NCBI RefSeq assembly: GCF_032444005.1 | Contig: NC_091287.1 | Span: 16,926,001-16,990,000, forward strand | From: Ranitomeya imitator | Taxonomy: Eukaryota | DNA length: 64,000 nt | Reading direction: 5' to 3' | Shown here: piece by piece, positions 14,051 to 60,279 of the stretch | Layout: each line of letters opens with the position of its first letter | Position numbering within the stretch: the first letter of the stretch is position 1 | Position numbers and translations under genes: made by a program | Notes under the pieces: model-generated | Databases searched by the model: none | The model's input: only the letters and a program-made list of their open reading frames with translations | What the model was told of the DNA's origin: nothing

Positions 14051-17000
14051 TCTTCTTGTTGCCCCCACTCTTCCTTCCATTATTTTCTCTTTCCTTCTGC
14101 GCTTTCGTCCACTGTTCTCTTCCTTCCTCTTTGCCTCCATTCTTTTCCTCCCTTTCCTTCTATGCTTTCTTCCATCGTTCTCTTCCTTCCTCTTTACCCT
14201 CATTCTTTTCCTCCCTTTCCTTCTGCGCTTTCTTCCATCGTTCTCTTCCTTTCTCTTTGACTTCATTCTTTTCCTCCCTTTCCTTCTGTGCTTTCTTCCA
14301 TCGTTCTCTTCCTTCCACCTTTGCCTCCATTCTTTTCCTCCCTTTCCTTCTGCTTTTTCTTCCACCATTCTCTTCCTTCCTCTTTGCCTCCATTGTTTTC
14401 CTCTCTTTCCTTCTGCACTTTCTTCCACTGTTCTCTTCCTTCCTCTTTGCCTCCATTCTTTTCTTCTCTTATCCTTCTGCGCTTTCTTCCATCGTTCTCT
14501 TCCTTCCTCTTTGCCTCCATTCTTTTCTTCTCTTTTCCTTCTGCGCTTCTTTCCACCATTCTCTTCCTTCCTATTTACCTCCATTCTTTTCCTACCTTTA
14601 CTTCTGTGATTTCTTTCATCGTTCTCTTCCTTCCTCTTTGCCCCCATTTTTTCCTCCCTTTCCTTCTGCGATTTCTTCAATCAATCTCTTCTTTCCTCTT
14701 TGCCTCCATTCTTTTCCTTTCTTTCCTTCCACCACTCTCTTCCTTCCTCTTTGCCTCCATTCTTTTCCTACCTTCCCTTCTGCGCTTTCTTCCATCATTC
14801 TCTTCCTTTCTCTTTGCCTCCATTATTTTCCTCCCTTTCCTTCTGCGTTTTCTTCCACCATTCTCTTCCTTCCTCTTTGCCTCCATTCTTTTCCTCCCTT
14901 TCCTTCTGTGTTTTCTTCCATCGTCCTCTTCCTTCCTCTTTGCCTCCATTCTTTTCCTACCTTTCCTTCTGTGCTTTCTTCCATCGTCCTCTTCCTTCCT
15001 CTTTGCCTCCATTGTTTTCCTCCCTTTCCTTCTGCGCTTTCTTCCACTGTTCTCTTCCTTCCTCTTTGCCTCCATTCTTTTCCTACCTTTCCTTCTGTGC
15101 TTTCTTCCATCGTCCTCTTCCTTCCTCTTTGCCTCCATTCTTTTCCTCCCTTTCCTTCTGTGCTTTCTTCCATCGTCCTCTTCCTTCCTCTTTGCCTCCA
15201 TTCTTTTCCTCCCTTTCCTTCTGTGCTTTCTTTCATCGTCCTCTTCCTTCCTCTTTGCCTTCATTCTTTTCCTACCTTTCCTTCTGTGCTTTCTTCCATC
15301 GTCCTCTTCCTTCCTCTTTACCTCCATTCTTTTCCTCCCTTTCCTTCTGTGCTTTCTTCCATCGTCCTCTTCCTTCCTCTTTACCTCCATTCTTTTACTC
15401 CCTTTCCTTCTGTGCTTTCTTCCATTGTCCTCTTCCTTCCTCTTTGCCTCCATTCTTTTCCTCCCTTTCCTTCTGTGCTTTCTTCCATCGTCCTCTTCCT
15501 TCCTCTTTACCTCCATTCTATTCCTCCCTTTCCTTCTGTGCTTTCTTCCATCGTCCTCATCCTTCCTCTTTGCCTCCATTCTTTTCCTCCCTTTCCTTCT
15601 GTGCTTTCTTCCATCGTCCTCTTCCTTTCTCTTTACCTCCATTCTTTTACTCCCTTTCCTTCTGTGCTTTCTTCCATCATCCTCTTCCTTCCTCTTTGCC
15701 TCCATTCTTTTCCTCCCTTTCCTTCTGTGCTTTCTTCCATCGTCCTCTTCCTTCCTCTTTACCTCCATTCTATTCCTCCCTTTCCTTCTGTGCTTTCTTC
15801 CATCGTCCTCTTCCTTCCTCTTTGCCTCCATTCTTTTCCTCCCTTTCCTTCTGTGCTTTCTTCCATCGTCCTCTTCCTTCCTCCTTGCCTCCATTCTTTT
15901 CCTCCCTTTCCTTCTGCGCTTTCTTCCATCGTCCTCTTTCTTCCTCTTTGCCTCCATTCTTTTCCGCCCTTTCCTTCTGTGCTTTCTTCCATCGTCCTCT
16001 TCCTTCCTCTTTGCCTCCATTCTTTTCCTCCCTTTCCTTCTGCGCTTTCTTCCATCGTCCTCTTCCTTTCTCTTTACCTCCATTCTTTTCCTCCCTTTCC
16101 TTCTGTGCTTTCTTCCATCGTCCTCTTCCTTCCTCTTTGCCTCCATTCTTTTCCTCCATTTCCTTCTGTGCTTTCTTCCATCGTCCTCTTCCTTCCTCTT
16201 TACCTCCATTCTTTTCCTCCCTTTCCTTCTGTGCTTTCTTCCATCGTCCTCTTCCTTCCTCTTTACCTCCATTCTATTCCTCCCTTTCCTTCTGTGCTTT
16301 CTTCCATCGTCCTCTTCCTTCCTCTTTGCCTCCATTCTTTTCCTCCCTTTCCTTCTGTGCTTTCTTCCATCGTCCTCTTCCTTCCTCCTTGCCTCCATTC
16401 TTTTCCTCCCTTTCCTTCTGCGCTTTCTTCCATCGTCCTCTTTCTTCCTCTTTGCCTCCATTCTTTTCCGCCCTTTCCTTCTGTGCTTTCTTCCATCGTC
16501 CGCTTTCTTCCATCGTCCTCTTCCTTCCTCTTTGCCTCCATTCTTTTCCTCCCTTTCCTTCTGCACTTTCTTCCATCGTCCTCTTCCTTTCTCTTTACCT
16601 CCATTCTTTTCCTCCCTTTCCTTCTGCGCTTTCTTCCATCGTCCTCTTTCTTCCTCTTTGCCTCCATTCTTTTCCTCCCTTTCCTTCTGTGCTTTCTTCC
16701 ATCGTCCTCTTCCTTTCTCTTTACCTCCATTCTTTTACTCCCTTTCCTTCTGTGCTTTCTTCCATCATCCTCTTCCTTCCTCTTTGCCTCCATTCTTTTC
16801 CTCCCTTTCCTTCTGTGCTTTCTTCCATCGTCCTCTTCCTTCCTCTTTACCTCCATTCTATTCCTCCCTTTCCTTCTGTGCTTTCTTCCATCGTCCTCTT
16901 CCTTCCTCTTTGCCTCCATTCTTTTCCTCCCTTTCCTTCTGTGCTTTCTTCCATCGTCCTCTTCCTTCCTCCTTGCCTCCATTCTTTTCCTCCCTTTCCT

Positions 17001-18940
17001 TCTGCGCTTTCTTCCATCGTCCTCTTTCTTCCTCTTTGCCTCCATTCTTTTCCGCCCTTTCCTTCTGTGCTTTCTTCCATCGTCCTCTTCCTTCCTCTTT
17101 GCCTCCATTCTTTTCCTCCCTTTCCTTCTGCGCTTTCTTCCATCGTCCTCTTCCTTTCTCTTTACCTCCATTCTTTTCCTCCCTTTCCTTCTGTGCTTTC
17201 TTCCATCGTCCTCTTCCTTCCTCTTTGCCTCCATTCTTTTCCTCCATTTCCTTCTGTGCTTTCTTCCATCGTCCTCTTCCTTCCTCTTTACCTCCATTCT
17301 TTTCCTCCCTTTCCTTCTGTGCTTTCTTCCATCGTCCTCTTCCTTCCTCTTTACCTCCATTCTATTCCTCCCTTTCCTTCTGTGCTTTCTTCCATCGTCC
17401 TCTTCCTTCCTCTTTGCCTCCATTCTTTTCCTCCCTTTCCTTCTGTGCTTTCTTCCATCGTCCTCTTCCTTCCTCCTTGCCTCCATTCTTTTCCTCCCTT
17501 TCCTTCTGCGCTTTCTTCCATCGTCCTCTTTCTTCCTCTTTGCCTCCATTCTTTTCCGCCCTTTCCTTCTGTGCTTTCTTCCATCGTCCGCTTTCTTCCA
17601 TCGTCCTCTTCCTTCCTCTTTGCCTCCATTCTTTTCCTCCCTTTCCTTCTGCACTTTCTTCCATCGTCCTCTTCCTTTCTCTTTACCTCCATTCTTTTCC
17701 TCCCTTTCCTTCTGTGCTTTCTTCCATCGTCCTCTTCCTTCCTCTTTGCCTCCATTCTTTTCCTCCCTTTCCTTCTGCGCTTTCTTCCATCGTCCTCTTC
17801 CTTTCTCTTTACCTCCATTCTTTTCCTCCCTTTCCTTCTGTGCTTTCTTCCATCGTCCTCTTCCTTCCTCTTTGCCTCCATTCTTTTCCTCCCTTTCCTT
17901 CTGCGCTTTCTTCCATCGTCCTCTTCCTTTCTCTTTACCTCCATTCTTTTCCTCCCTTTCCTTCTGCGCTTTCTTCCATCGTCCTCTTCCTTCCTCTTTG
18001 CCTCCATTCTTTTCCTCCATTTCCTTCTGTGCTTTCTTCCATCGTCCTCTTCCTTCCTCTTTACCTCCATTCTTTTCCTCCCTTTCCTTCTGTGCTTTCT
18101 TCCATCGTCCTCTTCCTTCCTCTTTACCTCCATTCTATTCCTCCCTTTCCTTCTGTGCTTTCTTCCATCGTCCTCTTCCTTCCTCTTTGCCTCCATTCTT
18201 TTCCTCCCTTTCCTTCTGTGCTTTCTTCCATCGTCCTCTTCCTTCCTCCTTGCCTCCATTCTTTTCCTCCCTTTCCTTCTGCGCTTTCTTCCATCGTCCT
18301 CTTTCTTCCTCTTTGCCTCCATTCTTTTCCGCCCTTTCCTTCTGTGCTTTCTTCCATCGTCCTCTTCCTTCCTCTTTGCCTCCATTCTTTTCCTCCCTTT
18401 CCTTCTGCGCTTTCTTCCATCGTCCTCTTCCTTTCTCTTTACCTCCATTCTTTTCCTCCCTTTCCTTCTGTGCTTTCTTCCATCGTCCTCTTCCTTCCTC
18501 TTTACCTCCATTCTATTCCTCCCTTTCCTTCTGTGCTTTCTTCCATCGTCCTCTTCCTTTCTCTTTACCTCCATTCTTTTCCTCCCTTTCCTTCTGTGCT
18601 TTCTTCCATCGTCCTCTTCCTTCCTCTTTGCCTCCATTCTTTTCCTCCCTTTCCTTCTGCGCTTTCTTCCATCGTCCTCTTTCTTCCTCTTTGCCTCCAT
18701 TCTTTTCCTCCCTTTCCTTCTGTGCTTTCTTCCATCGTCCTCTTCCTTCCTCTTTGCCTCCATTCTTTTCCTCCATTTCCTTCTGTGCTTTCTTCCATCG
18801 TCCTCTTCCTTCCTCTTTACCTCCATTCTTTTCCTCCCTTTCCTTCTGTGCTTTCTTCCATTGTCCTCTTCCTTCCTCTTTACCTCCATTCTTTTCCTAC
18901 CTTTCCTTCTGCGCTTTCTTCCACTGTTCTCTTCCTTCCT
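14050..18940. repeat. 63-bp polypyrimidine minisatellite, about 75 copies
   Basis: Unit CTTCCATCGTCCTCTTCCTTCCTCTTTGCCTCCATTCTTTTCCTCCCTTTCCTTCTGTGCTTT. The ORF track shows a matching 21-aa periodicity. Confidence 0.97.
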
Positions 18941-21545: not shown

Positions 21546-23265
21546 GATAAATTTCTCTAGAATGATATCAGTATATTTTTGCCCTGTGTTGTCAGATCTC
21601 GGCTACTTGCTGCAGGAGGATCCTGAATCCCATCATCCGCCTTATTAAGCATTCAATGCGTGTCCGCTCAGCAGTCTGGACGAGAGGCCGATGTCAGGAG
21701 ATTGTGCACATTAATGCTGAAACACACAACTTTCATTTCCCATTCATTTACCAGAGCCATATGATAAGATAATAGAATGTGACCTTGTGCAGGCCGCTAA
21801 TATGTGACACACTGCAAACCAGCCCACCATGGAGAACAAAAAAGAACTGCCCTGAATGGGGCAAATCTACGAGCCAATCACATATCAGGAGAAGTAGGAC
21901 AGGTTGTATACTGGAGATTATGTGTGGGGAATGTCAAAGGTCGCAGCCAGGGGGGTCACGAACAGCTCTGTGCTGCCCCCTATCATCCAGACAATATGCA
22001 ATTGACCGACGATCAACAGAGAAGGCCGCAGGCTTTTTCCACTAAGGCCGGTTATTGGGAAACTAACAGCATGTGGTATATACTACTCCGATTCCAAAGC
22101 ATAGAATATGTGTATAAACTCTTTGTATGGTCACTGCTAACTGCACGATAACCCAAAAACTACTCGCCGCCACCACCAGTCATTTGTATACAGGCCGCCT
22201 GGAGGCCTCGTTCTGGTAGCATATGGCTTTGGGGCGCGGTTTACAGAACAAAAAGAACAGAACTGTTATGTTTTATATTTACTCCAGATTGATAGGCAGT
22301 GTTTGTTAAATATATGCAAAAGATTTTACAAAGGGGGACAAACAATACAGCATATGCAATTACAGAAAATAAAGAGAATAAACAAAAGAAACTTACTAAA
22401 CCTCTAAGTATTGACGACGTCTAAAAGTTGGCATTTACCTTTTATTTGCTCCTAAGTTACACCCACACCCCTCCACTTGTTGACTCCTACCAGGGTTGAA
22501 CATGGGATGTGGCTTCAGTTTCAGATAATTATGAGATTCACTACATTGATGATATATTTGCTCCTGAGAGTCGCAGGTGCTCGATTTTGATGTCATAATT
22601 TTTTTTTAACATGATTTTATCTAGAGACCAAATATGACAGGTGTAGCCTGGTCTATCAGCCCATATTTAATTGAAAGGTATCTGGTCATCACTCAGAGAC
22701 GTGAAACAATGCTTTGCATTCGCCATTTCATCCCATTTCCGAAAATATCATTTTCCTATTTATGGCAGTTCATACAAACCATCCCTTCTGTGGGGGGTGC
22801 ACACAAGCATCCCAGAAGCAAAGCATCGAGATAAAGCCGTTATTCCATGGCAAGGAATTAACATCCATCTTCTCTCTTCACACAGGTACAACTCCCCACC
22901 TCTGCTTGCTGTCGCATCTGGGAAAACCGAGAGACTATTTGTCCAAAACAGTAACCATATTTTATTTATCGCATCTTTTAAACTAACAATGTATGACTAC
23001 AAAACATAATGAATGACAAAAGCTAGATAATGGTGAACACTGGTGAAGCTCCTACACCCCTTTTACATATTATATATATATCAATAAAGTGGATGGGTGG
23101 ACGGTGGACCCATAAGGTTAGCAGCAATAAAAATAAAGTGCTAGTGCTTAACTTGATCTAATCATTCATTCAATGCCCCTATGCAGTGTTTAATAATCCC
23201 TAAGCGTATGGATATATACTAGCTATTCAGTGCAATCTCACACATAGTGACACATATGCTGGAAG

Positions 23266-23847
23266 TTAAGTAAAAAGGGCAGCACACTGCAGCGCCAAAA
23301 CATGCAAACTTGAAAACACGAAATTTGAACTGCATTACTGCACTAGAAATATGAAAAATGAGCGCTTTTAGCGCATAAAAATGGCCATATTTATGTGTAC
23401 CTCGTAGCCACTTTACGGCATCTCTCTTATACCAGGTCCTACGTTTGACCTACCTCACCGAGAATAAACGTCTCCATCTGAATGGGTACATGTGAAACCT
23501 CTTCTTGGACTCAAATTCTCTCTCTCTGTGGAGGGGTATTGGACCTACTATAATTAAAACACCTGTGGCTAGGAGGCGGAGTGCACGATCAGAAGGCTAG
23601 AGAATACATTTCAAAAACCTGACCTGCACATCCAAACATAGACTGAGTGTGAACAGGTGCTGAACCCAGAGTCGCCAACTCGTATATAGTTAAGTAAAAA
23701 GGGCAGCACACTGCAGCGCCAAAACATGCAAACTTGAAAACACGAAATTTGAACTGCATTACTGCACTAGAAATATGAAAAATGAGAGCTTTTAGCGCAT
23801 AAAAATGGCCATATTTATGTGTACCTCGTAGCCATTTTTGAAATGAA
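23266..23847. mobile_element. 1.37-mer of a 424-bp unit inserted with a 14-bp TSD
   Basis: A 147-bp direct repeat (23264-23410 and 23688-23834). Flanked by ACATATGCTGGAAG at 23252-23265 and 23848-23861. Confidence 0.8.
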
Positions 23848-23963
23848 ACATATGCTGGAAGGTCAGTATATCACTGCAGAGCATTCACCATAAATGATAT
23901 GCTGCCACTGACATTACATTTCAGGGTTTTTTTTACCCATAGTCTCCACACGGTGTCAGATGC

Positions 23964-26029: not shown

Positions 26030-26381
26030 CATGGTCGGCGGGTGAGGGGGAGCGATGCCTGTCAAATACTCACCCGCTCCTGGTGCTCCTGACGTGGTCC
26101 CTGCATGACAACCTGCAGGCCATTTTCAGTATTCTGTAGTGGATTCTCTTGGCATTGGGAACTTCTCGCAGGAGAAAACTCCTAATATTCTGTTTAGATC
26201 AGCACATTACTATCACTGCTGCCACATACAGCAGAAACATCTCCCGGCAGAGTACCACATTTTTTTACTTATTTATTTTTTTTGGAGTGGGGGGGGGGGG
26301 GGGTGAGTGCATCTTGTGTCATTTATCTCAGGATCAGATTTCCTGGAGTTTTAGGCCATAGAAAATGTTGGAACTATTTTT

Positions 26382-26765
26382 CAAATTGTCTCTTCAGAGA
26401 GGAAGAGGACTAGAACTCTAGCGCCACCTATTGGAAGTAGCCATCCTAACAGTCAATGTCGACCCTTTAACGAGCCTTGTCACATGACTTAGGATAAGAG
26501 CCAAACCAGAATCTCAATTTGCAGACACGATGTTTCGGGGTACTGCCCCTCGTCAGTGCAAAGTGGAGATCTGGTTTGGCTGATTGAGAGGCGTTGACTG
26601 TTAGGATTGCTACTTCCTATAGGTGGCACTAGAGTTCTAGTCCTCTTTCTCTCTGAAGAGACAATTTGCATATTTCCCAGAGGAGCATTGCGGCTTTAAG
26701 TCTCCTCACCTCGACATGCTTATCATGTCACTCTCCGCAAGGAGAAACGATACTTCTTGGATCCC
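26382..26765 (-). mobile_element. Non-coding hammerhead-bearing retro-insertion (retrozyme-like), about 384 bp
   Basis: TSD GGAACTATTTTT (26370-26381 and 26766-26777). Long inverted arms at 26382-26458 / 26592-26668 with a central hammerhead. Confidence 0.82.
26518..26562 (-). ncRNA. Type I hammerhead ribozyme with canonical core
   Basis: Minus strand reads UUUGCA-CUGACGA-GGGG cagua CCCC-GAA-ACA ucg UGU-C-UGCAAA. Predicted GUC cleavage at 26524. Confidence 0.9.
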
Positions 26766-27399
26766 GGAACTATTTTTCCTAACACTTTTTTATTTAGTTC
26801 TTTTTGCCATTTTCCTGATCATTTGTAGATGATCTGTGATGTTCCTCTCGTTTAGTTATGTGATTTTGGTGACTTTCCGCTCACAGATAAGAGACATAAT
26901 TGTACAGATAATCCGGTGCTCGGCCCGTCCCCGCTAATACCTGCCGGCCGCGAGTGCACGCAGCGTTCACAGGCGGCGTGAAAGCCGCGGCGTGCGGAGA
27001 ATAGAACATTCTGTAATAATTAATGAAAAGGCTGCAGAGCAAAAATCTGCTCATTACCACTAAAATGTAAGAGACACGACTGGTGCGGCGGCTGCTCGAA
27101 ATAAAGGGGCCGACAGAGAAACTCTGTTACCATAGCAGCAATCTGCACAGTTCAGAACCCCGTCCTCTGCCTCCTGATTGCTTCCCCGAGGAGGTAAACA
27201 AACAGCTGGTTTATTTTATTTCCTCGCAAAAGCCTCCGAAAATTCACATTCTACCTTCGGAAATACACACAGCACCCAGGAAAGGGAAAAATGACCAAAA
27301 ATATCCAAAAATTACATAAAATAATGTAATAACCAAAATAACTACACAAGTACTGTATGACGAGAATAATTACAAAACTAATAATAATAATAATAGTAA

Positions 27400-32303: not shown

Positions 32304-33470
32304 TATAGGGGCAGTATTATAGTAGTTACATTCTTGTATATAGGGGCAGTATTATAGTAGTTATATTCTTGTACATAGGAGCAGTATTATAGTAGTTATA
32401 TTCTTGTACATAGGGGCAGTATTATAGTAGTTATATTCTTGTACATAGGAGCAGTATTATAGTAGTTATATTCTTGTACATAGGGGCAGTATTATAGTAG
32501 TTATATTCTTGTACATAGGAGCAGTATTATAGTAGTTATATTCTTGTACATAGGAGCAGTATTATAGTAGTTATATTCTTGTACATAGGAGCAGTATTAT
32601 AGTAGTTATATTCTTGTACATAGGAGCAGTATTATAGTAGTTATATTCTTGTACATGGGGGCAGTATTATAGTAGTTATATTCTTGTACATAGGAGCAGT
32701 ATTATAGTAGTTATATTCTTGTACATAGGGGCAGTATTATAGTAGTTATATTCTTGTATATAGGGGCAGTATTATAGTAGTTATATTCTTGTACATAGGA
32801 GCAGTATTATAGTAGTTATATTCTTGTAAATAGGGACAGTATTATAGTAGTTATATTCTTGTACATAGGAGCAGAATTATAGTAGTTATATTGTTGTATA
32901 TAGGGGGCAGTATTATAGTAGTTATATTGTTGTAAATAGGGGGCAGTATTATAGTACTTATATTCTGGTACATAGGGGCAGTATTATAGTAGTTATATTC
33001 TTGTACATAGGAGCAGTATTATAGTAGTTATATTCTTGTAAATAGGGACAGTATTATAGTAGTTATATTCTTGTATATAGGTGCAGTATTATAGTAGTTA
33101 TATTCTTGTACATAGGAGCAGAATTATAGTAGTTATATTCTTGTACATAGGAGCAGTATTATAGTAGTTATATTCTTGTGCATAGGGGCAGTATTATAGT
33201 AGTTATATTTTTGTACATAGGAGCAGAATTATAGAAGTTATATTCTTGTACATAGGGGCAGTATTATAGTAGTTATATTCTTGTACATAGGAGCAGAATT
33301 ATAGAAGTTATATTCTTGTACATAGGGGCAGTATTATAGTAGTTATATTCTTGTGCATAGGGGCAGTATTATAGTAGTTATATTTTTGTACATAGAGACA
33401 GTATTATAGTAGTTATATCCTTGTGTATAGGGGCAGTATTATAGTAGTTAAATTCTTGTATATAAGGGGC
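32304..33470 (+). repeat. 35-bp minisatellite, about 33 copies
   Basis: Unit GGGGCAGTATTATAGTAGTTATATTCTTGTACATA. Confidence 0.97.
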
Positions 33471-34216
33471 ATAAATCCAATATTTTTTTGTATAATTGAG
33501 TTTACGATTTGGAGTGTTAGCCCCGGCTTTATTCATAATTTTTACACAGTTTTCATGTTTGTTTGTTTTTACATAACATTTAAATTTACTTATTTCTTTA
33601 AACCATACTCACTGCCATTTACTTTGCAGTATGAGCACTTGCACTTCTGATGTTTCCATGGTAACATCATTCTTTCGGTGTGCGGTGTCCAGGGTGCTGA
33701 GATTTGCACTGTACAATCCTGAACTAGAGATAGACTTCTTAATTCCCAAGTAGCACTTATTACAGAAGAGACTTTTCTGAAAACAGTCTTTTGAAAATCA
33801 AGTGCGACTAGATGAGACTGCAGAGTCCTGTTTCTGTGAGAGATAATCTGGCCTTAAAATGAAATTCCAGTGGGACCAATGCTCATTATGTTCAGTGTCA
33901 CTTGCAAGGAAAAGCCAGAGTGTGGGACAAGGAGTGAGCCTAGTTAAAGGTAACAAAGGCGGTGTGCATTTTCTCATTTTTGCTTCAGAGGATCATTGGC
34001 TGCAACTTTCTGCAAATCCTAAAACTTTTTTTTTCAATAATATATAAAAAAGATTCATAAAGCCACCACTAGGGAGTCCTCACTATACACAGATTTATAC
34101 CGCCACCACTAGGGGGAGCTCACTACATACAGATTTATACAGTCACCACTAGAGGGAGCTCACTACATACAGATTTATACAGTTACCACTAGAGGGAGCT
34201 CACTACATACAGATTT

Positions 34217-41347: not shown

Positions 41348-41889
41348 ATGTGGAAAGCAAAAGAATTGTCAATGGATCTATGGGAAAAGGTAGTTGAACT
41401 GTATAAAACAGGAAAGGGATACAAAAAGATATCCAAGGAATTGATAACGCCAGTCAGCAGCGTTCACACTATGATTAACAAATGGAAAATCAGGGGCTCT
41501 GTAAAAACAAAACCACGGTCAGGTAGACCAACAAAGATGTCGTCCACAACTGCCAGGAATATTGTTCGGGAAGCAAAGAAAGACCCACAAATAATATCAG
41601 CTGACATACAGGACTCTCTAAAAACTAGCGGTGTGGTTGCTTCAAGATGCACAATAAGGAGGCACTTGAAGAAAAATAGGCTGCATGGTCGAGTCGCCAG
41701 AAGAAAGCCATTACTGCGCAAATGCCACAAAGTATCTCACCTACAATACGCAAAACAGCACAGAAACAAGCCTCAAAAGTTCTGGAACAAGGTAATTTGG
41801 AATGATGAGACCAAAATTAAACTTTTTTGGACACAACTATAAACGTTACATTTGGAGAGAGGTCAACAAGGCCTATGATGAAAGAAACG
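41348..41889 (+). pseudogene. Tc1 transposase N-terminal fragment (HTH, GRP motif, first catalytic D)
   Basis: MWKAKELSMDL...RSGRPTK...ARRKPLL...WNDETKI, followed by a frameshift. Confidence 0.9.
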
Positions 41890-43153: not shown

Positions 43154-44758
43154 CAGTGGGGCAAAAAAGTATTTAGTCAGTCAGCAATAGTGCAAGTTCC
43201 ACCACTTAAAAAGATGAGAGGCGTCTGTAATTTACATCATAGGTAGACCTCAACTATGGGAGACAAACTGAGAAAAAAAAATCCAGAAAATCACATTGTC
43301 TGCTTTTTTAACATTTTATTTGCATATTATGGTGGAAAATAAGTATTTGGTCAGAAACAAAATTTCATCTCAATACTTTGTAATATATCCTTTGTTGGCA
43401 ATGACAGAGGTCAAACGTTTTCTGTAAGTCTTCACAAGGTTGCCACACACTGTTGTTGGTATGTTGGCCCATTCCTCCATGCAGATCTCCTCTAGAGCAG
43501 TGATGTTTTTGGCTTTTCGCTTGGCAACACGGACTTTCAACTCCCTCCAAAGGTTTTCTATAGGGTTGAGATCTGGAGACTGGCTACGCCACTCCAGGAC
43601 CTTGAAATGCTTCTTACGAAGCCACTCCTTCGTTGCCCTGGCGGTGTGCTTTGGATCATTGTCATGTTGAAAGACCCAGCCACGTTTCATCTTCAATGCC
43701 CTTGCTGATGGAAGGAGGTTTGCACTCAAAATCTCACGATACATGGCCCCATTCATTCCTTCATGTACCCGGATCAGTCGTCCTGGCCCCTTTGCAGAGA
43801 AACAGTCCCAAAGCATGATGTTTCCACCACCATGCTTTACAGTAGGTATGGTGTTTGATGGATGCAACTCAGTATTCTTTTTCCTCCAAACACGACAAGT
43901 TGTGTTTCTACCAAACAGTTCCAGTTTGGTTTCATCAGACCATAGGACATTCTCCCAAAACTCCTCTGGATCATCCAAATGCTCTCTAGCAAACTTCAGA
44001 CGGGCCCGGACATGTACTGGCTTAAGCAGTGGGACACGTCTGGCACTGCAGGATCTGAGTCCATGGTGGCGTAGTGTGTTACTTATGGTTGGCCTTGTTA
44101 CATTGGTCCCAGCTCTCTGCAGTTCATTCACTAGGTCCCCCCGCGTGGTTCTGGGATTTTTGCTCACCGTTCTTGTGATCATTCTGACCCCACGGGGTGG
44201 GATTTTGCGTGGAGCCCCAGATCGAGGGAGATTATCAGTGGTCTTGTATGTCTTCCATTTTCTAATTATTGCTCCCACTGTTGATTTCTTCACTCCAAGC
44301 TGGTTGGCTATTGCAGATTCAGTCTTCCCAGCCTGGTGCAGGGCTCCAATTTTGTTTCTGGTGTCCTTTGACAGCTCTTTGGTCTTCACCATAGTGGAGT
44401 TTGGAGTCAGACTGTTTGAGGGTGTGCACAGGTGTCTTTTTATACTGATAACAAGTTTAAACAGGCGCCATTACTACAGGTAATGAGTGGAGGAAAGAGG
44501 AGACTCTTAAAGAAGAAGTTACAGGTCTGTGAGAGCCAGAAATCTTGATTGTTTGTTTCTGACCAAATACTTATTTTCCACCATAATATGCAAAAAAAAT
44601 GATAAAAAACAGACAATGTGATTTTCTGGATTTTTTTTTCTCAGTTTGTCTCCCATAGTTGAGGTCTACCTATGATGTAAATTACAGACGCCTCTCATCT
44701 TTTTAAGTGGTGGAACTTGCACTATTGCTGACTGACTAAATACTTTTTTGCCCCACTG
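43154..44758 (-). mobile_element. Young full-length Tc1, 1605 bp, with about 205-bp IR/DR-type TIRs
   Basis: TA|CAGTGGGGCAAAAAAGTATTTAGTCAG ... CTGACTAAATACTTTTTTGCCCCACTG|TA. The TIRs are near-identical and contain an inner direct repeat AAAATAAGTATTTGGTCAG. Confidence 0.97.
43370..44392 (-). CDS. Tc1-family DD34E transposase, 340 aa, uninterrupted
   Basis: Paired-like [25 protein letters not shown] and [11 protein letters not shown]. There are 34 residues between the second D and E. Confidence 0.95.
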
Positions 44759-49492: not shown

Positions 49493-50586
49493 CCCCGTCC
49501 GTCCTCATACTCACCTCCTGTCACTCAGCTCAGCTGCCTGTCCCACACACTGCGCGCGCCACAGCCGCCGACATCCCTCTGGCGCTCTGTCCCGCCGCCT
49601 TCTTCCTGACTGAGTGAGCGGTCATGTGATACTGCTCAATAAGGTAATGAATATGCGCATATTCATGACCTTAATGACCGGTACCATGTGACCTCTCACT
49701 CAGGACGCGCTACAGACGGTGAGAACAGGCATCGCTGGAGGCTGGAGCAGGAGGTGAGTATCGTCTCTCTTCATGGAGGGTGGGTGGGATGCGGAGGCGG
49801 GGAGGGGCGCGGGGAGGCAGGCGGGGAGGCGGGGTTTTGCGTCGGTCGCGTTTGTGACTTAAAAAAATAAAATAAAAAAATCCTTGCCCAGGTGCCGCCC
49901 CCCCCCGCAATGTCGCCGCCCTAGGCACGTGCCCTCGAGTGCCTAGTGGCAAATACGGCCCTGTATCTGACGATTCTCCACATACGCACGTTGTACATTA
50001 TAGATGAAGTCCTGGTCCCAGCGGTGAAAGGCTTGCTCCTGTTATCCTTTAATATTGCTTGGCTGAAGGTTCTTCTGCTTTATCAGCTTTGGTGGATAAT
50101 GAAGAACGGTGAAGATGACACTTGGAGGGATCTATAAGTGATGGTAGATATGGGCTTAACTGTTAGGTTTATGGTATACAGTACGTATAGCAGAATCAGC
50201 AGCCATCCCCAACTCAGAGCTGAAGGAAACGAATGCCTAAATGCCAGCTCTCCTGGAATGTACAGCAGGATTCCCCAAAAATGGGAGATTTACTGTAACA
50301 AGTCTCTTTGAATATGTCAAAAGCACCCAAAGAGTCACAAGTAGCATATTTCCCCTCCTATACAGAGTATTAATTGGTGAAGGAGTTAATAATTGTTAAA
50401 ATTATTTTATTCTCTATAGTGGATGCTTTCCTGAAACGGAAAGTACTTGCAAGCAGCATAATACAAAGAATAGCAGGTTTACCCAGAATCCTTTGCAGTA
50501 GGCGGAGCTATGCAAATAATCTCTTTCCACCCCAGTCTAATCCACAGCGCTTGGAACCGCCAAGCGTGCAATGCTGCGGATTAGTT

Positions 50587-50676
50587 CAATTCAATTCAAA
50601 TGAGCTTTATTGGCAGGACTAAGTACATGTTAGCATTGCCAAATGCTTCTGATTGATTAGTTGCTTGCTTGCTGAT
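50587..50676 (-). mobile_element. 5'-truncated LINE/SINE 3' tail with a (TTGAA)n end
   Basis: Minus strand ends CCAATAAAGCTCATTTGAATTGAATTG, flanked by GATTAGTT duplication. It adds exactly 98 bp to the 384-bp period. Confidence 0.65.
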
Positions 50677-50713
50677 GATTAGTTTCTAAATTTACACAGC
50701 CAACCAATTCCTA

Positions 50714-50757
50714 CCTGTGGACACGTGTTTCGGGCTTTAGGCCCTCATCAGCACAGG
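50714..50757 (-). ncRNA. Type I hammerhead ribozyme (complete)
   Basis: CCUGUG-CUGAUGA-GGGC cuaaa GCCC-GAA-ACACGUGU-C-CACAGG. Predicted cleavage at 50720. Confidence 0.92.
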
Positions 50758-51097
50758 GCTGGAATTGGTTGGCTGTATGGAGTGGGGCTCGGTGAGCAAG
50801 CGATACATACATGCTAGCCACCTTAGGGAGAGACCCAAGTTGGGCTAAATGTAGCGGGACGAAAGAGACCGAAAAGCCCTCTACTTAAAGGAAATACATA
50901 GTGGATGCTTTCCTGAAACGGAAAGTACTTGCAAGCAGCATAATACAAAGAATAGCAGGTTTACCCAGAATCCTTTGCAGTAGGCGGAGCTATGCAAATC
51001 ATCTCTTGCCACCCCTGTCTAATCCACAGCGATTGGAACCGCCAAGGGTGCAATACTGCGGATTAGTTTCTAAATTTACACAGCCAACCAATTCCTA

Positions 51098-51122
51098 CCT
51101 GTGGACACGTGTTTCGGGCTTT
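51098..51122 (-). ncRNA. 3' half of the same hammerhead, cut at the inversion junction
   Basis: AAAGCCC-GAA-ACACGUGU-C-CACAGG. The GUC lies at 51104, 384 nt from 50720. Confidence 0.85.
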
Positions 51123-51226
51123 CGTCCCGCTACATTTAGCCCAACTTGGGTCTCTCCCTAAGGTGGCTAGCATGTATGTATCGCTTGCTCACCGAGCCCA
51201 AATCCATACAGCCAACCAATTCCAGC

Positions 51227-51270
51227 CCTGTGCTGATGAGGGCCTAAAGCCCGAAACACGTGTCCACAGG
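51227..51270 (+). ncRNA. Type I hammerhead ribozyme (complete)
   Basis: CCTGTG CTGATGA GGGC CTAAA GCCC GAA ACACGTGT C CACAGG. Predicted cleavage after 51264. Confidence 0.92.
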
Positions 51271-52949
51271 TAGGAATTGGTTGGCCGTGTAAATTTAGAA
51301 ACTAATCCACAGCATTGCACGCTTGGCGGTTCCAAGCGCTGTGGATTAGACTGGGGTGGAAAGAGATGATTTGCATAGCTCCGCCTACTGCAAAGGATTC
51401 AGGGTAAACCTGCTATTCTTTGTATTATGCTGCTTGCAAGTACTTTCCGTTTCAGGAAAGCATCCACTATGTATTTCCTTTAAGTAGAGGGCTTTTCGGT
51501 CTCTTTCGTCCCGCTACATTTAGCCCAACTTGGGTCTCTCCCTAAGGTGGCTAGCATGTATTTATTCTCTATGTAAGATAATTAAATCTAGATCCGTCAT
51601 CATCTTACAAATACAAAGACTATATGCTGAACACCTTCAGGACGTTTTACAATTTCGATGTTATTGAGGAGAAACCACTGTGCTGTCCAAATTACCATTT
51701 GCTGTGACATTTCACATTAATCCCAATATGTGCTGTTATATGTCATGCAGTACATTATATTATGTGTTATATGTGCATGCAACGAAAAATACTAAGGTGT
51801 GATGGCTGATGAATTGGAGATTTGTGAGTTAATACATCACATGGGAGAATTGCCCTGCCAGGTCTAAATATGCCCAGTGAGTAACAGTAATGAAGTATGA
51901 AGTGATGTATCCAGAGCATAAAAAGTTAACAAACTGAGCTGCTGTGTGCAATAATGAATCACAGAGGGAGAGAGGAGTTAGCAATAACGTGCATGGCTAA
52001 ACCTAGATGTGTATAGCGAATCTCCTTCCTTGAGTGAGCAGATACATGCAGACGGGCAAATTGAAGAAGTATAATTTCAGCCGGCTCAACAGATGATGTC
52101 TATCAAAATTAGCCAGTGTTTTTCAACTGTTACGGTTCTGGTGCTGGGCTCTGTTTCTTATTTCCCCACTGGGATAAATATGACCAGAAAGTACAACACT
52201 GATTAACAGTAAGGAAGTCTGGAAGTCTGAAGTGATGAATGCAGAGCCTAAAAAGTTAACACACTGAGCTGCTGTGTTAAATAGTTACAGTAAGTGAGGA
52301 GTTAGCATTAACATGCATGGCCAAGATGTCTACAGAGAAGCTCAGGCTTATAGTGAGAAGATGCACACAGATTGGCAAATTAAAGAAGAATCCTGTTTAT
52401 CATAAATAGCCCTTGGTTCCCAACTGTTAGGGCTCCGTGGCTGGACTCATTCTTCCTTCTTCTATGGCTCCTTTTGTGCTATTTCTTGTTATTGTAGCTC
52501 CACATTCTCCTCTGATGTCATCATCCAAGGTCTTTTCAGGCCAGCTCAAGTGGCTTCTTAATGCCTAAGTATTAAATTAGTGTAATATTCTGTTACCATT
52601 TATTTGTCAGGCGTTTAGCTTCACCTTCACCTTCCACTTGACTGAGATCCATCTAGTTGTCTATTTCCTCAGCTTCTATCCAGCAGCCAGTGTTATTACC
52701 AGTGTCTGTACATGTTTTCACAGACAGTGCTGCTCAATCAAGATTCTAGATACACCATTCATCTCAACTACTTTTGGTGTCATTCATACCTTCGTCTCTG
52801 TTACCAAGGTATCGTCTAATTATTTTTTCTGCTGTGGTGATGTTGTCTACACGTTCAACTCAGCTGTGTCAAGTTTCCTGGTAACTAACTCATCTTAACT
52901 GTCCTAGTGATGTCAGTACTTACGACACTGCAGTTCCTGTCAATTATAC

Positions 52950-55618: not shown

Positions 55619-57840
55619 TAACTACTATAATAATATGTATAACAACCTAACTACTATAATACTGCCCATATGTCCAAGAATATAACTACTATAACACTGC
55701 TCCTATGTACAAGAATATAACTACTATAATACTGCCCCTATGTACAAGAATATAACTACTATAATACTGCCCCCATGTACAAGAATATAACTACTATAAT
55801 ACTGCCCATATGTCCAAGAATATAACTACTATAACACTGCTCCTATGTACAAGAATATAACTACTATAATACTGCTCCTATGTACAAGAATATAACTACT
55901 ATAATACTGCCCCTATGTACAAGAATATAACTACTATAATACTGCCCCCATGTACAAGAATATAACTACTATAATACTGCCCCCATGTACAAGAATATAA
56001 CTACTATAATACTGCCCCCATGTACAAGAATATAACTACTATAATACTGCCCCATATGTCCAAGAATATAACTACTATAACACTGCTCCTATGTACAAGA
56101 ATATAACTACTATAATACTGCCCCTATGTACAAGAATATAACTACTATAATACTGCCCCTATGTACAAGAGTATAACTACTATAATACTGCCCCTTAAGT
56201 CCAATAATATAACTACTATAATACTGCTCCTATGTACAATAATATAACTACTATAACACTGCCCATATGTCCAAGAATATAACTACTATAATACTGCTCC
56301 TATGTACAATAATATAACTACTATAATACTGCCCATATGTACAAGAATATAACTACTATAATACTGCTCCCTATGTAGAAGAATATAACTACTATAATAC
56401 TGCTCCTATGTACAAGAATATAACTACTATAATACTGCCCCTTAAGTCCAAGAATATAACTACTATAACACTGCTCCTATGTACAAGAATATAACTACTA
56501 TAATACTGCTCCTATGTACAAGAATATAACTACTATAATACTGCCCCTATGTACAATAATATAACTACTATAATACTGCTCCTATGTACAAGAATATAAC
56601 TACTATAATACTGCCCCTATGTACAAGAATATAACTACTATAATACTGCCCTCTATGTACAATAATATAACTACTATAATACTGCTCCTATGTACAAGAA
56701 TATAACTACTATAATACTGCCCCTTAAGTCCAATAATATAACTACTATAATACTGCTCCTATGTACAATAATATAACTACTATAATACTGCCCCTATGTA
56801 CAATAATATAACTACTATAATACTGCTCCTATGTACAAGAATATAACTACTATAATACTGCTCCTATGTACAAGAATATAACTACTATAATACTGCTCCT
56901 ATGTACAAGAACATAACTACTATAATACTGCCCCTTAAGTCCAATAATATAACTACTATAATACTGCTCCTATGTACAATAATATAACTACTATAATACT
57001 GCCCCTATGTACAATAATATAACTACTATAATACTGCTCCTATGTACAAGAATATAACTACTATAATACTGCTCCTATGTACAAGAATATAACTACTATA
57101 ATACTGCCCCTTACATCCAAGAATATAACTACTATAATAATGCCCCTATGTCCAATAATATAACTACTATAATACTGCTCCTATGTACAATAATATAACT
57201 ACTATAATACTGCCCCTATGTACAATAATATAACTACTATAATACTGCCCCTATGTACAATAATATAACTACTATAATACTGCCCCTATGTACAAGAATA
57301 TAACTACTATAATACTGCTCCTATGTACAAGAATATAACTACTATAATACTGCCCATGTACAAGAATATAACTACTATAATACTGCTCCTATGTACAAGA
57401 ATATAACTACTATAATACTGCCCCTATGTACAAGAATATAACTACTATAATACTGCTCCTATGTACAAGAATATAACTACTATAATACTGCTCCTATGTA
57501 CAAGAATATAACTACTATAATACTGCTCCTATGTACAAGAATATAACTACTATAATACTGCTCCTATGTACAAGAATATAACTACTATAATACTGTCCTA
57601 TGTACAAGAATATAACTACTATAATACTGCTCCTGTGTACAAGAATATAACTACTATAATACTGCCCTCTATGTACAAGAATATAACTACTATAATACTA
57701 CTCCTATGTACAAGAATATAACTGCTATAATACTGCTCCTATGTACAAGAATATAACTACTATAATACTGCCCTCTATGTACAAGAATATAACTACTATA
57801 ATACTGCCCTCTATGTACAAGAATATAAGTAGTATAATAC
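55619..57840 (-). repeat. 35-bp minisatellite, about 63 copies; reverse orientation of the 32304-33470 array
   Basis: Unit TATGTACAAGAATATAACTACTATAATACTGCCCC. Confidence 0.97.
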
Positions 57841-60279
57841 TGTTTGAATCTACAATTATACAGTATATTCCATGTTATGAATATGAATTTTAGGGACAGC
57901 ACAGATTCCATTTTTCCGGTCTCCTCCTCCTTGTAAGATGTAACTATACAGCAGTATTATATATGATATAGTTATTGTTTTTTCTGTATTACGGCTCTTT
58001 CTGCTGCTCTATAGATTATTCGGAGGTGGAGGAGATGAATATTTGAGCAGGCTGGTGACCAGGGTCCTATTTGCAGCCGCCCTGTTGCTTTGCTAATTAG
58101 TATTTGACCTTTTCAGCACAAGCTGGTTTCCTCCAGGTCTGTGCTGGAGATAAGAGGCCAATGGTTATTATCAGGCCGGCAGGCGCTATATGCAGATGTA
58201 GCAGAGCTGGGGTTGTCAGTTAACTCTTTCTATTCTGGGCCATATTGGGCAGGGTTGGGGAGAAGTGTTGATTGGCGACTGGAGGAAAAGGCGATCTGGG
58301 ATTCGAGAATGGGAAGATAATGATGTCTTGTCTGGGGTCTGAAATATTTTTAGAATTTATTTTGGGGTCTGATCTGGGGTCACGTTTTGGAGTCTGATTT
58401 GATTACTGGTCTGGTCTGGGGTCTGCATGTGTTCTGCGTTACTTTCACGTTCTGATCCGGGGTTTGACCCCTCCGTTGCTCCTTTCCAGTCCATGTGATG
58501 CTTTGCTGTAGAGCTGGACAGAGAGTGGCTGGGAATTTGCTGGCCGTTGCAGCAGGATGGCAGCAGCTCGGGGACCCCTCCTCACTTATATTTGCAGTTA
58601 ACCCTTTGCCATAGGTTCCACTTTTTATTTAATTCATCAGCCAAAACTCATCATTTCAGGTCTGCAGTTTCTTAAACAAGTGATCCGGGACCCCCACCTA
58701 TCTCAGGCCCCCTGATCCCCTATTCTGATTGGTACCCTGGCCGGTGTGGCTGGCGAGGCATGGTCCCTCTGTTTGGGGATTCTGGTGCATTTTCTCGGAT
58801 GCTTTTGGAGCTGTCATGGAGATGAATGACTACAAATAAGCATTGACAGCCTTGTCTCCAGACACCGAGGCTTTGTGACCTCCAACGATTAAGACAATGC
58901 AGTCCTATGGGGTAACAGTCTTTCCTTACAGATGTTCGTATCTTTTCTTCTCTATCCAATCCTGAGCGCCATAATGACTTCTCCTAATGACTGACAAGAG
59001 CAGAACATGAATCAGACCCTAAAGGAGTCATCCCAGAAGAGATAATGATCAGCATTCGACAGAAGAGATGATCGATGTGTAGGGTCCCCACCTTTAAGAG
59101 AATGTAGACCCTCAGCCCCACTATTTCTCCTTACAGACAGCCGGGTATAGTGTTCAGTACAATCCATGAACCCCATAAGTACTGAATGAAGCTGCTTTAT
59201 CTGTACGGGGTGCCCAGGACTCTGACCCCCAGGGATATGATGGAACACCCCTTTAAGGGCCGGGCTCTAGGACCAAGGAGATGTGATGTTTGGAGCCTTT
59301 TATTGCAGATTAAATCTTCCGCCCATTTAACCCTCCAATATCCAGGAGCCGGAACCTCACACCTGGACGACGGACAAGGAGGAGATCTTCAAGTTAAATC
59401 TGCCGTTATCATTTAATTATGGTGCAGTCTCCTCCGTGATGAGCTCCGGCCTGAAATATGATGTAACCTCCTGAAATTCTGGCCGATTAGATTTCTCGGA
59501 GGAGCTGTGGTCGAAATGATCATTGCCGTATGAGTCATTCCCTCCATTTAAAGGGATGTTCCAGTTTTGGTCAATAGAACTTGAATGTTGTGTAATGCAA
59601 ATCTAGTCTGAATGGTTCCTTCACTGTTTTCCAGATCTCTGCTTGCTGTCAGTAAACTGGGATGATAAACGGCTGCTGTGAGCTAATTAGTTCTTTGCAC
59701 ACTTATAGGGTAAGCCACACAGGTCTGATTAGCGGAGGTCGCGCTTATTCGCCGACGCTTGGGGGCTCTTATGTTCAGGTGGCCTCCTCTCCATTGAGGT
59801 CGATGCCGCTCCCGCCTGGTTTGCATTGGCCAATAGAGGTTGAGGGAAGAAAAGTTAAAAGTAAGGATCTGACCAGATCTCTGGAACTTTGCTTCCCCCT
59901 TTAAATCCCCCCCAGCGTCCATGGATCAGTCGTTCATATCAATCTCTTGATCGAATCTCCCATCGTCTTCTAGGCAGAGTCTCAGATTGTGGCATGCTGC
60001 CCCATGACCGTAGGCAGGACGTCCAGCTGCTTGTATCTGCCGTGCACTGGATGCTGTCGGAGAGCGGACACAGTAAAGGAAACAGTCATAAGGGTGAGTC
60101 ATGTGACCACTGCTAACATGGTGGTGGTGGTGCTTACATCCCTGTGCCATGGGCAAGATTTACCCGCAAACCTCTATGACAATTAACCTGCACGTTCCAC
60201 TGTACCAAGACCAGAGCTTGGGCCCTTAAACGATATGGACCCCTCTAGAGACAATTTTTCAAACTAAAAAATAATTTTT

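What the first reader, a model, noticed from the sequence alone, without database searches (positions are those of the whole stretch)
50406..51572. Inverted multimer of a 384-bp hammerhead unit inserted as one event (retrozyme-like)
Seen: a non-coding 384-bp unit is repeated on both strands head-to-head. It carries two complete canonical type I hammerheads and one half copy, and the whole block sits inside a single 12-bp TSD. The ends fall at unrelated phases of the unit. Known: metazoan retrozymes and newt satellite 2 are tandem units of a few hundred bp with type I hammerheads that can yield circular RNA, and Penelope-like elements carry such hammerheads. Inference: reverse transcription around a circular or multimeric RNA, plus a 5' inversion. 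Caveats: neither arm has two complete hammerheads, so this locus may not release a monomer in cis. The middle copy also differs at several positions, which fits a heterogeneous multimeric template as well as a single circle.
Basis: partly seen in the sequence, partly recalled or inferred. Interest (0 to 1): 0.9.

Follow-up and report, generated by a model that had tools for sequence, protein, structure and literature searches.

The report
Hammerhead retrozyme insertion with inverted arm
This is one young insertion of a very abundant, protein-free "retrozyme" repeat that carries self-cutting hammerhead RNA motifs, laid down with one arm inverted as Penelope-type retroelements are; the kind is already known in amphibians, but both of its ends sit in the same short motif rather than at random places.

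Summary
A 1,143-bp non-coding block (50418-51560) lies between perfect 12-bp duplications. It consists of a 384-nt unit, about 1.6 units on the minus strand and 1.15 on the plus strand. There is one complete type I hammerhead per strand plus a half copy.

It is a non-LTR retrozyme insertion, a kind already described in amphibians. Both arms have their RNA 3' ends facing outwards, and they meet at a CTTT microhomology. This means both nicked target strands primed cDNA synthesis, as in twin priming and the Penelope-type tandem/inverted pattern.

- The ends are not at unrelated phases. Both fall inside the only two copies of TATGTAT in the unit. The family's best-supported break points in the genome's own contigs lie at or next to these sites.
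- A single circular template is unlikely. Successive units within one arm differ at 6 of 161 positions, one of them a common family polymorphism.

One contig of a probable RNA run joins a 5' adapter exactly to the predicted cleavage product. Circular RNA was not shown, and the short contigs could not confirm the inversion joint.

Earlier follow-ups of this scan reached the same classification on other DNA of this genome. Verdict: a new member of a known kind.

The parts
50406..50417 (.). Left target-site duplication TTTATTCTCTAT
   Evidence: family D8. Background check. The reconstructed target is 75% A+T.
50418..50586 (-). Left arm, outer partial unit (Lc), phases 352 down to 182. Its outer end lies in the motif AGCATCCACTAT|GTAT.
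   Evidence: 98% identity to the unit.
50587..50684 (.). 98-bp extra segment inside the left arm, bounded by the 8-bp repeat GATTAGTT (13 bp with 2 mismatches). On the minus strand it ends in AATAAA...(TTGAA)3. Its origin is unresolved.
   Evidence: spacing 482 against 384; no other copy in the window.
50685..50865 (-). Left arm, middle unit part (Lb), phases about 181 down to 1. It contains the complete minus-strand hammerhead.
50697..50769 (-). Complete type I hammerhead. GUC lies at 50722-50720, with the predicted cut between 50720 and 50719.
   Evidence: HH9, 30.1 bits, E 3.6e-5; core motifs.
50866..51122 (-). Left arm, inner unit part (La), phases 384 down to about 128. It holds 5 clustered differences at phases 195-242. 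It ends in a half hammerhead that lacks CUGAUGA (GUC at 51106-51104).
51119..51128 (.). Inversion joint. There are 4 nt of perfect microhomology (CTTT) within an imperfect 8-of-10 match between phases 122-131 and the reverse complement of phases 1-10.
   Evidence: D2 and D3 overlap here.
51119..51560 (+). Right arm: one full unit (51119-51502) plus phases 1-58 of the next. Its outer end lies in the motif AGCATGTAT|GTAT.
51215..51287 (+). Complete type I hammerhead. GUC lies at 51262-51264, with the predicted cut after 51264. Stem III is the palindrome ACACGUGU.
   Evidence: 29.9 bits, E 4.2e-5. In one search the cofold of two copies forms a double hammerhead at -98.5 kcal/mol, against 2 x -43.9.
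51561..51572 (.). Right target-site duplication TTTATTCTCTAT. Its first 5 nt (TTTAT) match unit phases 59-63 (TGTAT) at 4 of 5 positions.

Best explanation
This is a single, young retrotransposition of a non-autonomous, non-LTR hammerhead retrozyme with a 384-nt unit.

Proposed steps:
1. An uncleaved oligomeric transcript of a genomic array of slightly different units served as template.
2. An AT-rich target was nicked on both strands 12 bp apart.
3. Each 3' overhang primed cDNA synthesis on the retrozyme RNA. In both cases synthesis started inside a copy of UAUGUAU, at phases 58 and 350-352.
4. The two cDNAs grew towards each other and were joined through a CTTT/AAAG microhomology. This gave a 442-bp plus-sense arm and a 705-bp minus-sense arm, both within one 12-bp TSD.
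5. The enzyme was most likely the RT/GIY-YIG protein of a Penelope-like element acting in trans.

Shown here: the anatomy, the TSD, the outward-facing 3' ends, the microhomologies, the motif at both ends, the family's abundance and its break points.

Inferred: the order of events, the multimeric template and the identity of the enzyme.
For: Anatomy and TSD.

Both arms have the RNA-sense 3' end at the outer edge. This follows directly from the strand of the hammerheads and the phase maps.

Primer-template microhomology:
- Right end: 4 of 5 nt.
- Left end: 2 nt plus a T.G pair.

End positions:
- TATGTAT occurs exactly twice in the unit, and both ends fall in it with a register offset of at most 1. 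For random pairs of ends this happens with frequency 8e-4, a figure computed after the fact.
- In the genome's own contigs (X1), the best-supported places where family copies run into unrelated flanks are 51181 (phase 63, 10 contigs) and 51478 (phase 360, 6 contigs). Both are sense 3' ends.
- X16 and X19 show another copy that ends at phase 60-62 and shares the flank ATGCCCTTC.

Abundance: family word depth is about 5e5, against 13.8 in the first flank bin.

Youth: 34 of 36 CpGs are kept and the TSD is perfect.

Heterogeneous template: La and Lc differ at 6 of 161 positions, and phase 234 (T/A) is split about 42:58 in the family.

Literature:
- Non-LTR retrozymes of 170-400 nt with type I hammerheads, with TSDs longer than 4 bp, are described in amphibians (PMC7229834).
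- Retrozymes are sister to PLE pLTRs (bioRxiv 10.64898/2026.07.22.740005).
- PLE insertions often carry an inverted 5'-truncated copy (PMC8557442).
- A purified PLE protein cleaves and extends both strands, starts internally on its RNA, prefers AT-rich targets and uses uncleaved RNA (PMC11167929).
Against: - No autonomous PLE lies in this window, and none was compared with the unit. The partner is therefore inferred. Other readers' unchecked notes report intact PLEs in this genome.
- The two preferred ends are 87 nt apart, not the 30-40 nt 'tail' spacing described for PLEs.
- The end motif is AU-rich and both primers are AT-rich. Simple microhomology annealing, rather than recognition by the RT, could place the ends there.
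- The second family break point (phase 360) is 4-8 nt from this copy's left end.
- The loose ends come from short contigs of what is probably the same sample as the assembly. 123 further loose ends were not shown.
- The inversion joint itself was not bridged by any listed contig.
- Differences between units could partly be RT errors.
Confidence: 0.72

Rival explanations
1. Rolling-circle reverse transcription around one circular 384-nt retrozyme RNA, followed by a 5' inversion.
For: Both arms are longer than one unit and are circularly permuted. All three hammerhead sites in the template were uncut or religated, as they would be in a circle. CircRNA templates are the published model for retrozymes (PMC7229834).
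Against: Two successive passes in the same arm differ at 6 of 161 positions, 5 of them clustered within 48 nt. One is a common family polymorphism. One pass carries a 98-bp extra segment. CpG retention of 34 of 36 and a ratio of 3 transitions to 8 transversions argue against ordinary decay after insertion as the source of these differences. In vitro, a PLE uses unprocessed RNA (PMC11167929).
Confidence: 0.15
2. The block is the pseudo-LTR part of a strongly 5'-truncated autonomous Penelope-like element, in its usual tandem/inverted arrangement. It would then not belong to an independent non-autonomous family.
For: The architecture is the one described for PLEs (PMC8557442). Xenopus retrozymes are sister to pLTRs (bioRxiv 10.64898/2026.07.22.740005).
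Against: The 384-nt periodicity runs on without any ORF sequence. The longest ORF is 33 aa, and the AUG in the CUGAUGA box meets a stop after 3 codons. Contigs of RNA-like runs cover all phases of the unit, with no other sequence between phases 384 and 1. The family is far more abundant than expected for pLTRs of one PLE (depth is only a rough guide).
Confidence: 0.1
3. The structure is an assembly artefact, or a DNA-level rearrangement (fold-back or palindrome formation) in a pre-existing tandem array, and not an insertion.
For: PLE-type inverted repeats are known to trouble assemblies (PMC8557442). No listed contig bridges the joint.
Against: The arms are unequal (705 against 442 bp). They differ at several positions and by a 98-bp segment, and they meet off-centre at a microhomology. 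The whole block is framed by a perfect 12-bp TSD in unique AT-rich DNA. A chimeric-read palindrome would be symmetric and would include the flanks.
Confidence: 0.03

Closest known systems
Metazoan non-LTR retrozymes (Cervera & de la Pena 2020, PMC7229834), e.g. axolotl Rtz331/Rtz353 and newt satellite 2
   Same: A non-coding unit of a few hundred nt and low GC (48%). Type I hammerhead with a very short stem III capped by a palindromic tetraloop, predicted to work better as a dimer. Very high copy number and a TSD longer than 4 bp. Present in RNA-like data sets.
   Different: Here the copy is not a plain head-to-tail array but two opposed arms within one TSD. Sequence similarity to the salamander families was not tested. 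Circular RNA was not shown.
Penelope-like elements (Poseidon/Neptune/Penelope): pLTRs with hammerheads and tandem/inverted insertions (PMC8557442, PMC11167929)
   Same: A partial tandem plus an inverted 5'-truncated copy, a variable-length TSD, an AT-rich target, cDNA synthesis from both target strands, and a start of reverse transcription at defined internal sites of an uncleaved RNA.
   Different: There is no RT/GIY-YIG ORF. The two preferred start sites are 87 nt apart rather than the 30-40 nt 'tail'. In the anole PLE the start site lies 85-92 nt after the hammerhead cut, whereas here it lies about 204 and about 296 nt after it.
LINE-1 twin priming (5' inversion); recalled from my own knowledge, Ostertag & Kazazian 2001
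   Same: The second target 3' end primes internally on the same RNA. The two cDNAs join by microhomology with a small loss at the joint. Here the loss would be 32 or 63 nt, depending on which arm is taken as the primary one.
   Different: There is no poly(A) tail, and the start is at an internal motif rather than at the RNA 3' end. The template is periodic, so the primary arm cannot be assigned.

Membership tests
Non-LTR retrozyme | Type I hammerhead ribozyme motif in the repeat unit | tested here: met
   both copies match a hammerhead model at E about 4e-5, below Rfam's gathering score. CUGAUGA, stem II GGGC/GCCC, GAAA and GUC are present, stem I is open and long. A second family in the window keeps the same helices with different letters.
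Non-LTR retrozyme | Short non-coding unit (about 170-400 nt) in head-to-tail copies, without LTR, PBS or PPT | tested here: met
   a 384-nt unit, 1.15 and 1.6 units per arm; no ORF above 33 aa. No terminal direct repeats other than the unit itself. PBS and PPT were not searched for specifically.
Non-LTR retrozyme | TSD longer than the 4 bp of plant LTR retrozymes | tested here: met
   A perfect 12-bp TSD.
Non-LTR retrozyme | Expressed as unit-length linear and circular RNA | tested here: inconclusive
   contigs of three runs guessed to be RNA (X16, X19, X20) cover all phases of the unit. One X19 contig joins a 5'-adapter-like sequence to C147, the first nt after the predicted cut. The library types are not on record, and contigs cannot show circles.
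Non-LTR retrozyme | Self-cleavage of the hammerhead (as a dimer in amphibians) | not testable with these tools
   Only predicted; the cofold of two copies forms the double hammerhead through the ACACGUGU palindrome, 10.7 kcal/mol better than two monomers.
'Active' non-LTR retrozyme in the sense of Li et al. 2026 (a hammerhead in every tandem repeat) | Two or more tandem units, each with a complete type I hammerhead | tested here: not met
   Each strand has one complete hammerhead. The second one on the minus strand lacks CUGAUGA.
Autonomous Penelope-like element | ORF with a telomerase-like RT and a GIY-YIG endonuclease | tested here: not met
   No ORF above 33 aa in the unit. The ORFs of 150 aa or more outside the satellite arrays (9 of the 21 listed) gave only Tc1-type transposase domains.
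Autonomous Penelope-like element | Tandem/inverted insertion with an inverted 5'-truncated copy | tested here: met
   This is why the locus works like a PLE insertion without being a PLE.

The most novel reading that the evidence does not exclude
The two outer ends of this copy, and the family's commonest break points, mark a defined start site for reverse transcription: UAUGUAU preceded by AGCAU, present twice per unit and used on both target strands. If so, this would be an in vivo footprint of Penelope-type internal, dual-strand priming acting in trans on a retrozyme RNA. It would also mean that uncleaved oligomers, not circles, are the transposition template. Both the retrozyme-PLE partnership and the template question would then be testable with one family.
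Probability: 0.35. Interest if true: 0.55.

Novelty: new member of a known kind. Interest (0 to 1): 0.36.

Why it matters
How animal retrozymes move is still inferred from co-occurrence with Penelope-like elements and from sequence kinship with their pLTRs. The published model takes a circular RNA as the template. A young copy like this one has sharp TSDs, both priming sites readable, a microhomology joint and non-identical successive units. It therefore gives concrete and checkable predictions: start sites at a short motif, priming on both strands, and an oligomeric template. These could be tested by a genome-wide census and with the in vitro PLE system that now exists. As a genomic object it is ordinary for an amphibian-type genome. 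The scan has already filed similar loci of other families in this same genome.

Tried and rejected
- Rfam at gathering thresholds found nothing in the window. At E-value mode over the whole window the hammerheads were lost to the filters. Only the 1.4-kb search showed them.
- Read laying could not confirm or refute the inversion joint. The contigs of the DNA run are 75-106 nt long in this high-copy family, and no listed piece bridges 51119-51128. The flank beyond 51587 had no depth, which the tool says proves nothing.
- No 'goes back' joints and no evidence for circles were obtained. All runs are kept as contigs.
- The search of earlier findings by sequence was blank.
- I looked for the TATGTAT end motif in the two other TSD-flanked elements of the window (26370-26778 and 23253-23862) and did not find it. 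The motif is therefore specific to this family, if it is meaningful at all.
Here it lies 15-18 nt upstream, in loop 2.
- I considered nested double insertion. I rejected it because there is no second TSD and no plus-oriented fragment to the left of the minus arm.
- The 98-bp segment has no other copy in the window, so its nature was not resolved. It could be a nested short retroposon tail, present in the source array or inserted later, or a template-switch filler.
- The organism was not verified here. 'Poison frog' comes from earlier notes only.
- No paper in the searchable library links retrozymes with twin priming.
Full report
1. WHAT IS THERE

- The 12-mer TTTATTCTCTAT occurs at 50406-50417 and again at 51561-51572 (family D8).
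- In the 14 kb of non-satellite sequence around the locus, only two perfect 12-mer direct repeats have a spacing of 900-1400 bp, and this is one of them. Its position exactly abutting both edges of the repeat block is therefore not chance.
- The reconstructed target is 75% A+T.

BLAST of 51119-51502 against the window defines a 384-nt unit and shows that the window holds no other copy. I number unit phases so that phase 1 is window position 51119.

- Right arm, plus sense: phases 1-384, then 1-58 of the next unit. The match continues to phase 63 with one mismatch, because the TSD starts with TTTAT where the unit has TGTAT.
- Left arm, minus sense, read from 51122 downwards:
  - phases about 128-384 (La, down to 50866);
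  - phases 1-196 (Lb, 50865-50670);
  - a 98-bp segment foreign to the unit (50587-50684);
  - phases 182-352 (Lc, 50586-50416).

It explains why the two left-arm copies are 482 bp apart and not 384 (D1). It is bounded by an 8-bp repeat, GATTAGTT. On the minus strand it ends in AATAAA...(TTGAA)3, and it has no other copy in the window.

2. THE HAMMERHEADS

A covariance search of the 1.4-kb region finds two hammerheads, at 51215-51287 (+) and 50697-50769 (-).

- Both score about 30 bits at E about 4e-5 against the HH9 model. This is below Rfam's curated threshold of 52, so Rfam at its own cut-offs reports nothing.
- The catalytic core is complete: CUGAUGA, stem II GGGC/GCCC with loop CUAAA, GAAA, and GUC followed by the 3' strand of a long, open stem I. 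This is the type I topology.
- The predicted cut is after 51264 on the plus strand, and between 50720 and 50719 on the minus strand. That is after phase 146.
- Stem III is only A-U and C-G closed by ACGU, so that ACACGUGU is a palindrome.
- A cofold of two copies forms the double hammerhead with an 8-bp intermolecular stem III at -98.5 kcal/mol, against 2 x -43.9 for two monomers.
- This is the weak-stem-III, dimer-dependent type described for newts and the axolotl (PMC7229834).
- A second, unrelated hammerhead element in the window (core at 26556-26533, minus strand) keeps the same helices with different letters.
- The third copy (La) starts inside loop 2. It lacks CUGAUGA and the 5' strand of stem I, so it is a half hammerhead.

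One speculative point, from inference only: in dimer mode the core of Lb could cut the GUC of La, 384 nt upstream.

The unit is non-coding. The longest ATG ORF in a trimer is 33 aa. The AUG inside CUGAUGA, which starts the ORF in the anole PLE, meets a stop after three codons. The unit folds much better than shuffled controls:
- linear, z = -5.3 against dinucleotide shuffles;
- circular, -143.9 kcal/mol with 68% of bases paired, z about -7 against simple shuffles.

3. HOW THE BLOCK WAS MADE

The hammerhead strand gives the RNA sense of each arm. In both arms the sense 3' end is at the outer edge, next to the TSD, and the 5' ends meet in the middle.

That is the geometry expected if the two 3' overhangs of a staggered 12-bp cut each primed cDNA synthesis on the RNA and the two cDNAs grew towards each other. 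The joint supports this:
- The top-strand cDNA ends in ...GGGCTTT.
- The bottom-strand cDNA ends in ...GGGACGAAAG.
- The two ends pair over CTTT/AAAG, within an imperfect 8-of-10 match.

If one RNA was used, 32 nt (phases 353-384) or 63 nt (phases 59-121) are missing at the joint, depending on which arm is taken as primary. Because the template is periodic, the two cases cannot be told apart. Either way this is the small loss typical of twin priming (my own knowledge of LINE-1 5' inversions).

The pattern also matches Penelope-like elements:
- PLE insertions show a partial tandem plus an inverted 5'-truncated copy (PMC8557442).
- A purified PLE protein cleaves and extends both target strands, prefers AT-rich DNA, starts reverse transcription at internal sites of its RNA and uses uncleaved RNA (PMC11167929).

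A nested second insertion is unlikely. There is no second TSD and no plus-oriented fragment to the left of the minus arm.

A misassembly is unlikely. The arms are unequal, differ in sequence, meet off-centre and are framed by a TSD in unique DNA.

4. THE ENDS ARE NOT AT UNRELATED PHASES

- The right arm stops inside AGCATGTAT|GTAT (phases 51-63).
- The left arm stops inside AGCATCCACTAT|GTAT (phases 341-356).
- TATGTAT occurs exactly twice in the unit, at phases 57 and 350.
- The first templated nucleotides are A58 and T350. Within the microhomology they could be in the very same register.
- Only 8 in 10,000 random pairs of ends share a 7-mer in this way, a figure computed after seeing the pattern.
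- The primer ends pair with the motif: 4 of 5 nt on the right, and 2 nt plus a T.G pair on the left.

Reads laid on 51060-51700 give a family-wide view.

- In the DNA run that probably comes from the assembled sample (X1), the unit has a summed word depth of about 2e5 to 7.5e5, against 13.8 in the first bin of the flank. The tool warns that this is not a copy number, but the family is clearly very abundant.
- The two best-supported places where family contigs run on into unrelated, mutually different sequence are 51181 (phase 63, 10 contigs) and 51478 (phase 360, 6 contigs). Both are sense 3' ends. The first is the exact end of motif A. The second lies 4 nt past motif B.
- Two RNA-like runs from different studies show a further copy. 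X19 has a flank ending in ...AATGCCCTTC before phase 18. X16 has phase 62 followed by ATGCCCTTC.... This is another TSD-flanked insertion that ends at motif A.

The family therefore has preferred 3' ends, and this copy uses both. The data do not show whether this reflects recognition by the RT or easy annealing of AT-rich overhangs to an AU-rich motif.

5. CIRCLE OR OLIGOMER?

Against the family consensus read from X1, the copies differ as follows.

| Copy | Differences from consensus |
|---|---|
| R1 | 3 private letters: 51286 C for T, 51309 A for G, 51401 A for T |
| La | 5 differences, all within phases 195-242 |
| Lb | 2 differences, at phases 82 and 84 |
| Lc | 1 difference |

- La and Lc are successive passes of the same cDNA, yet they differ at 6 of 161 positions.
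- At one of these (phase 234, T/A) the family itself is split about 42:58 (place 51352).
- Only 3 of the 11 differences are transitions, and 34 of 36 CpGs are intact.

Most differences therefore do not look like decay after insertion in a methylated vertebrate genome. They fit a template whose neighbouring units already differed, namely an unprocessed oligomeric transcript of a genomic array. RT errors cannot be excluded. All three hammerhead sites in the template were uncut. This agrees with the in vitro finding that uncleaved RNA is the substrate (PMC11167929) and argues against a single circular monomer.

6. EXPRESSION

No run is on record as RNA.

- Three runs guessed to be RNA (X16, X19, X20; three studies, two organisms) hold contigs that together cover every phase, including the passage from phase 384 to 1 and the cleavage site.
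- One X19 contig ends at 51105 and goes on with TCGTCGGACTGTAGAACTC. With the two aligned letters GA this reads GATCGTCGGACTGTAGAACTC. That is the reverse complement of the Illumina small-RNA-type 5' adapter (my own knowledge).
- The 26-mer of that adapter occurs in 226 papers, whose listed titles include RNA methods (tRNA sequencing, TSS selection) and DNA methods (methylation RAD, genotyping).
- Read on the minus strand, the adapter is joined to CACAGGUAGG..., that is to C147, the first nucleotide after GUC.
- There is no GATC in the genome at that place, so a DpnII-type ligation does not explain it.

This is a single contig of unknown library type. It hints at an abundant RNA 5' end at the predicted cut. 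It is not proof, and a 5'-OH end would need phosphorylation before it could be ligated. Nothing here shows a circle.

7. COMPARISON AND VERDICT

The locus meets the structural definition of a non-LTR retrozyme (PMC7229834):
- a type I hammerhead;
- a short non-coding unit repeated head-to-tail;
- no LTR;
- a TSD longer than 4 bp.

It is not an 'active' array in the sense of Li et al. (bioRxiv 10.64898/2026.07.22.740005), because it does not have two complete hammerheads in tandem. It is not a PLE, because it has no ORF. It is built like a PLE insertion.

No paper in the searchable library links retrozymes with twin priming. The 2020 paper does not mention inverted copies.

Earlier follow-ups of this scan reached the same classification for other families on other DNA of this genome (s1-271760, s1-271780). 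Unchecked notes report PLEs fused head-to-head inside one TSD in the same genome (s1-294665). The name 'poison frog' comes from those notes and was not verified here. The window itself is repeat-rich, with Tc1-type transposase ORFs and many minisatellites.

The kind is known and the copy is an ordinary, if very clean, member.

Noticed in passing
window 26370-26778: A second hammerhead element of another family, between 13-bp TSDs GGAACTATTTTTC. It has fold-back arms around a minus-strand hammerhead (CUGACGA ... GAAA at 26556-26533). Its helices co-vary with those of the element studied here. It does not carry the TATGTAT end motif.
   Followed up: partly
window 23253-23862: A 1.37-mer of a 424-bp non-coding unit between 14-bp TSDs ACATATGCTGGAAG. 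My core-motif scan found no hammerhead in it.
   Followed up: partly
window 50587-50684: A 98-bp segment inside one unit of the left arm, bounded by GATTAGTT repeats. On the minus strand it ends in AATAAA...(TTGAA)3, like the tail of a short retroposon. It was either nested in the source array or inserted later.
   Followed up: partly
window 32305-33471 and 55634-57842: The same 35-bp satellite in opposite orientations (ATAGGGGCAGTATTATAGTAGTTATATTCTTGTAC and its reverse complement). The two inverted arrays lie about 22 kb apart and bracket the region that holds this finding.
   Followed up: no
window 438-6754 and 14089-18940: A 40-bp satellite (159 copies) and a 63/126-bp CT-rich minisatellite without stop codons in several frames. 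They give spurious ORFs of 1,400-2,100 aa.
   Followed up: no
window 43370-44392 (-) and 41348-41842 (+): A Tc1/Sleeping-Beauty-type transposase ORF of 340 aa (HTH_SB, HTH_Tnp_Tc3_2, DDE_3) and a partial second copy.
   Followed up: partly
run X19, contig ending at window 51105: A 5'-adapter-like sequence joined exactly to C147, the first nucleotide after the predicted hammerhead cut. It is a possible direct trace of self-cleavage in vivo.
   Followed up: partly
runs X16 (loose end at 51180) and X19 (loose end at 51136): Another copy of the family, seen in two studies, spans phases 18 to 62 and is flanked on both sides by ATGCCCTTC. It has the same 3' end motif as the copy studied here.
   Followed up: no
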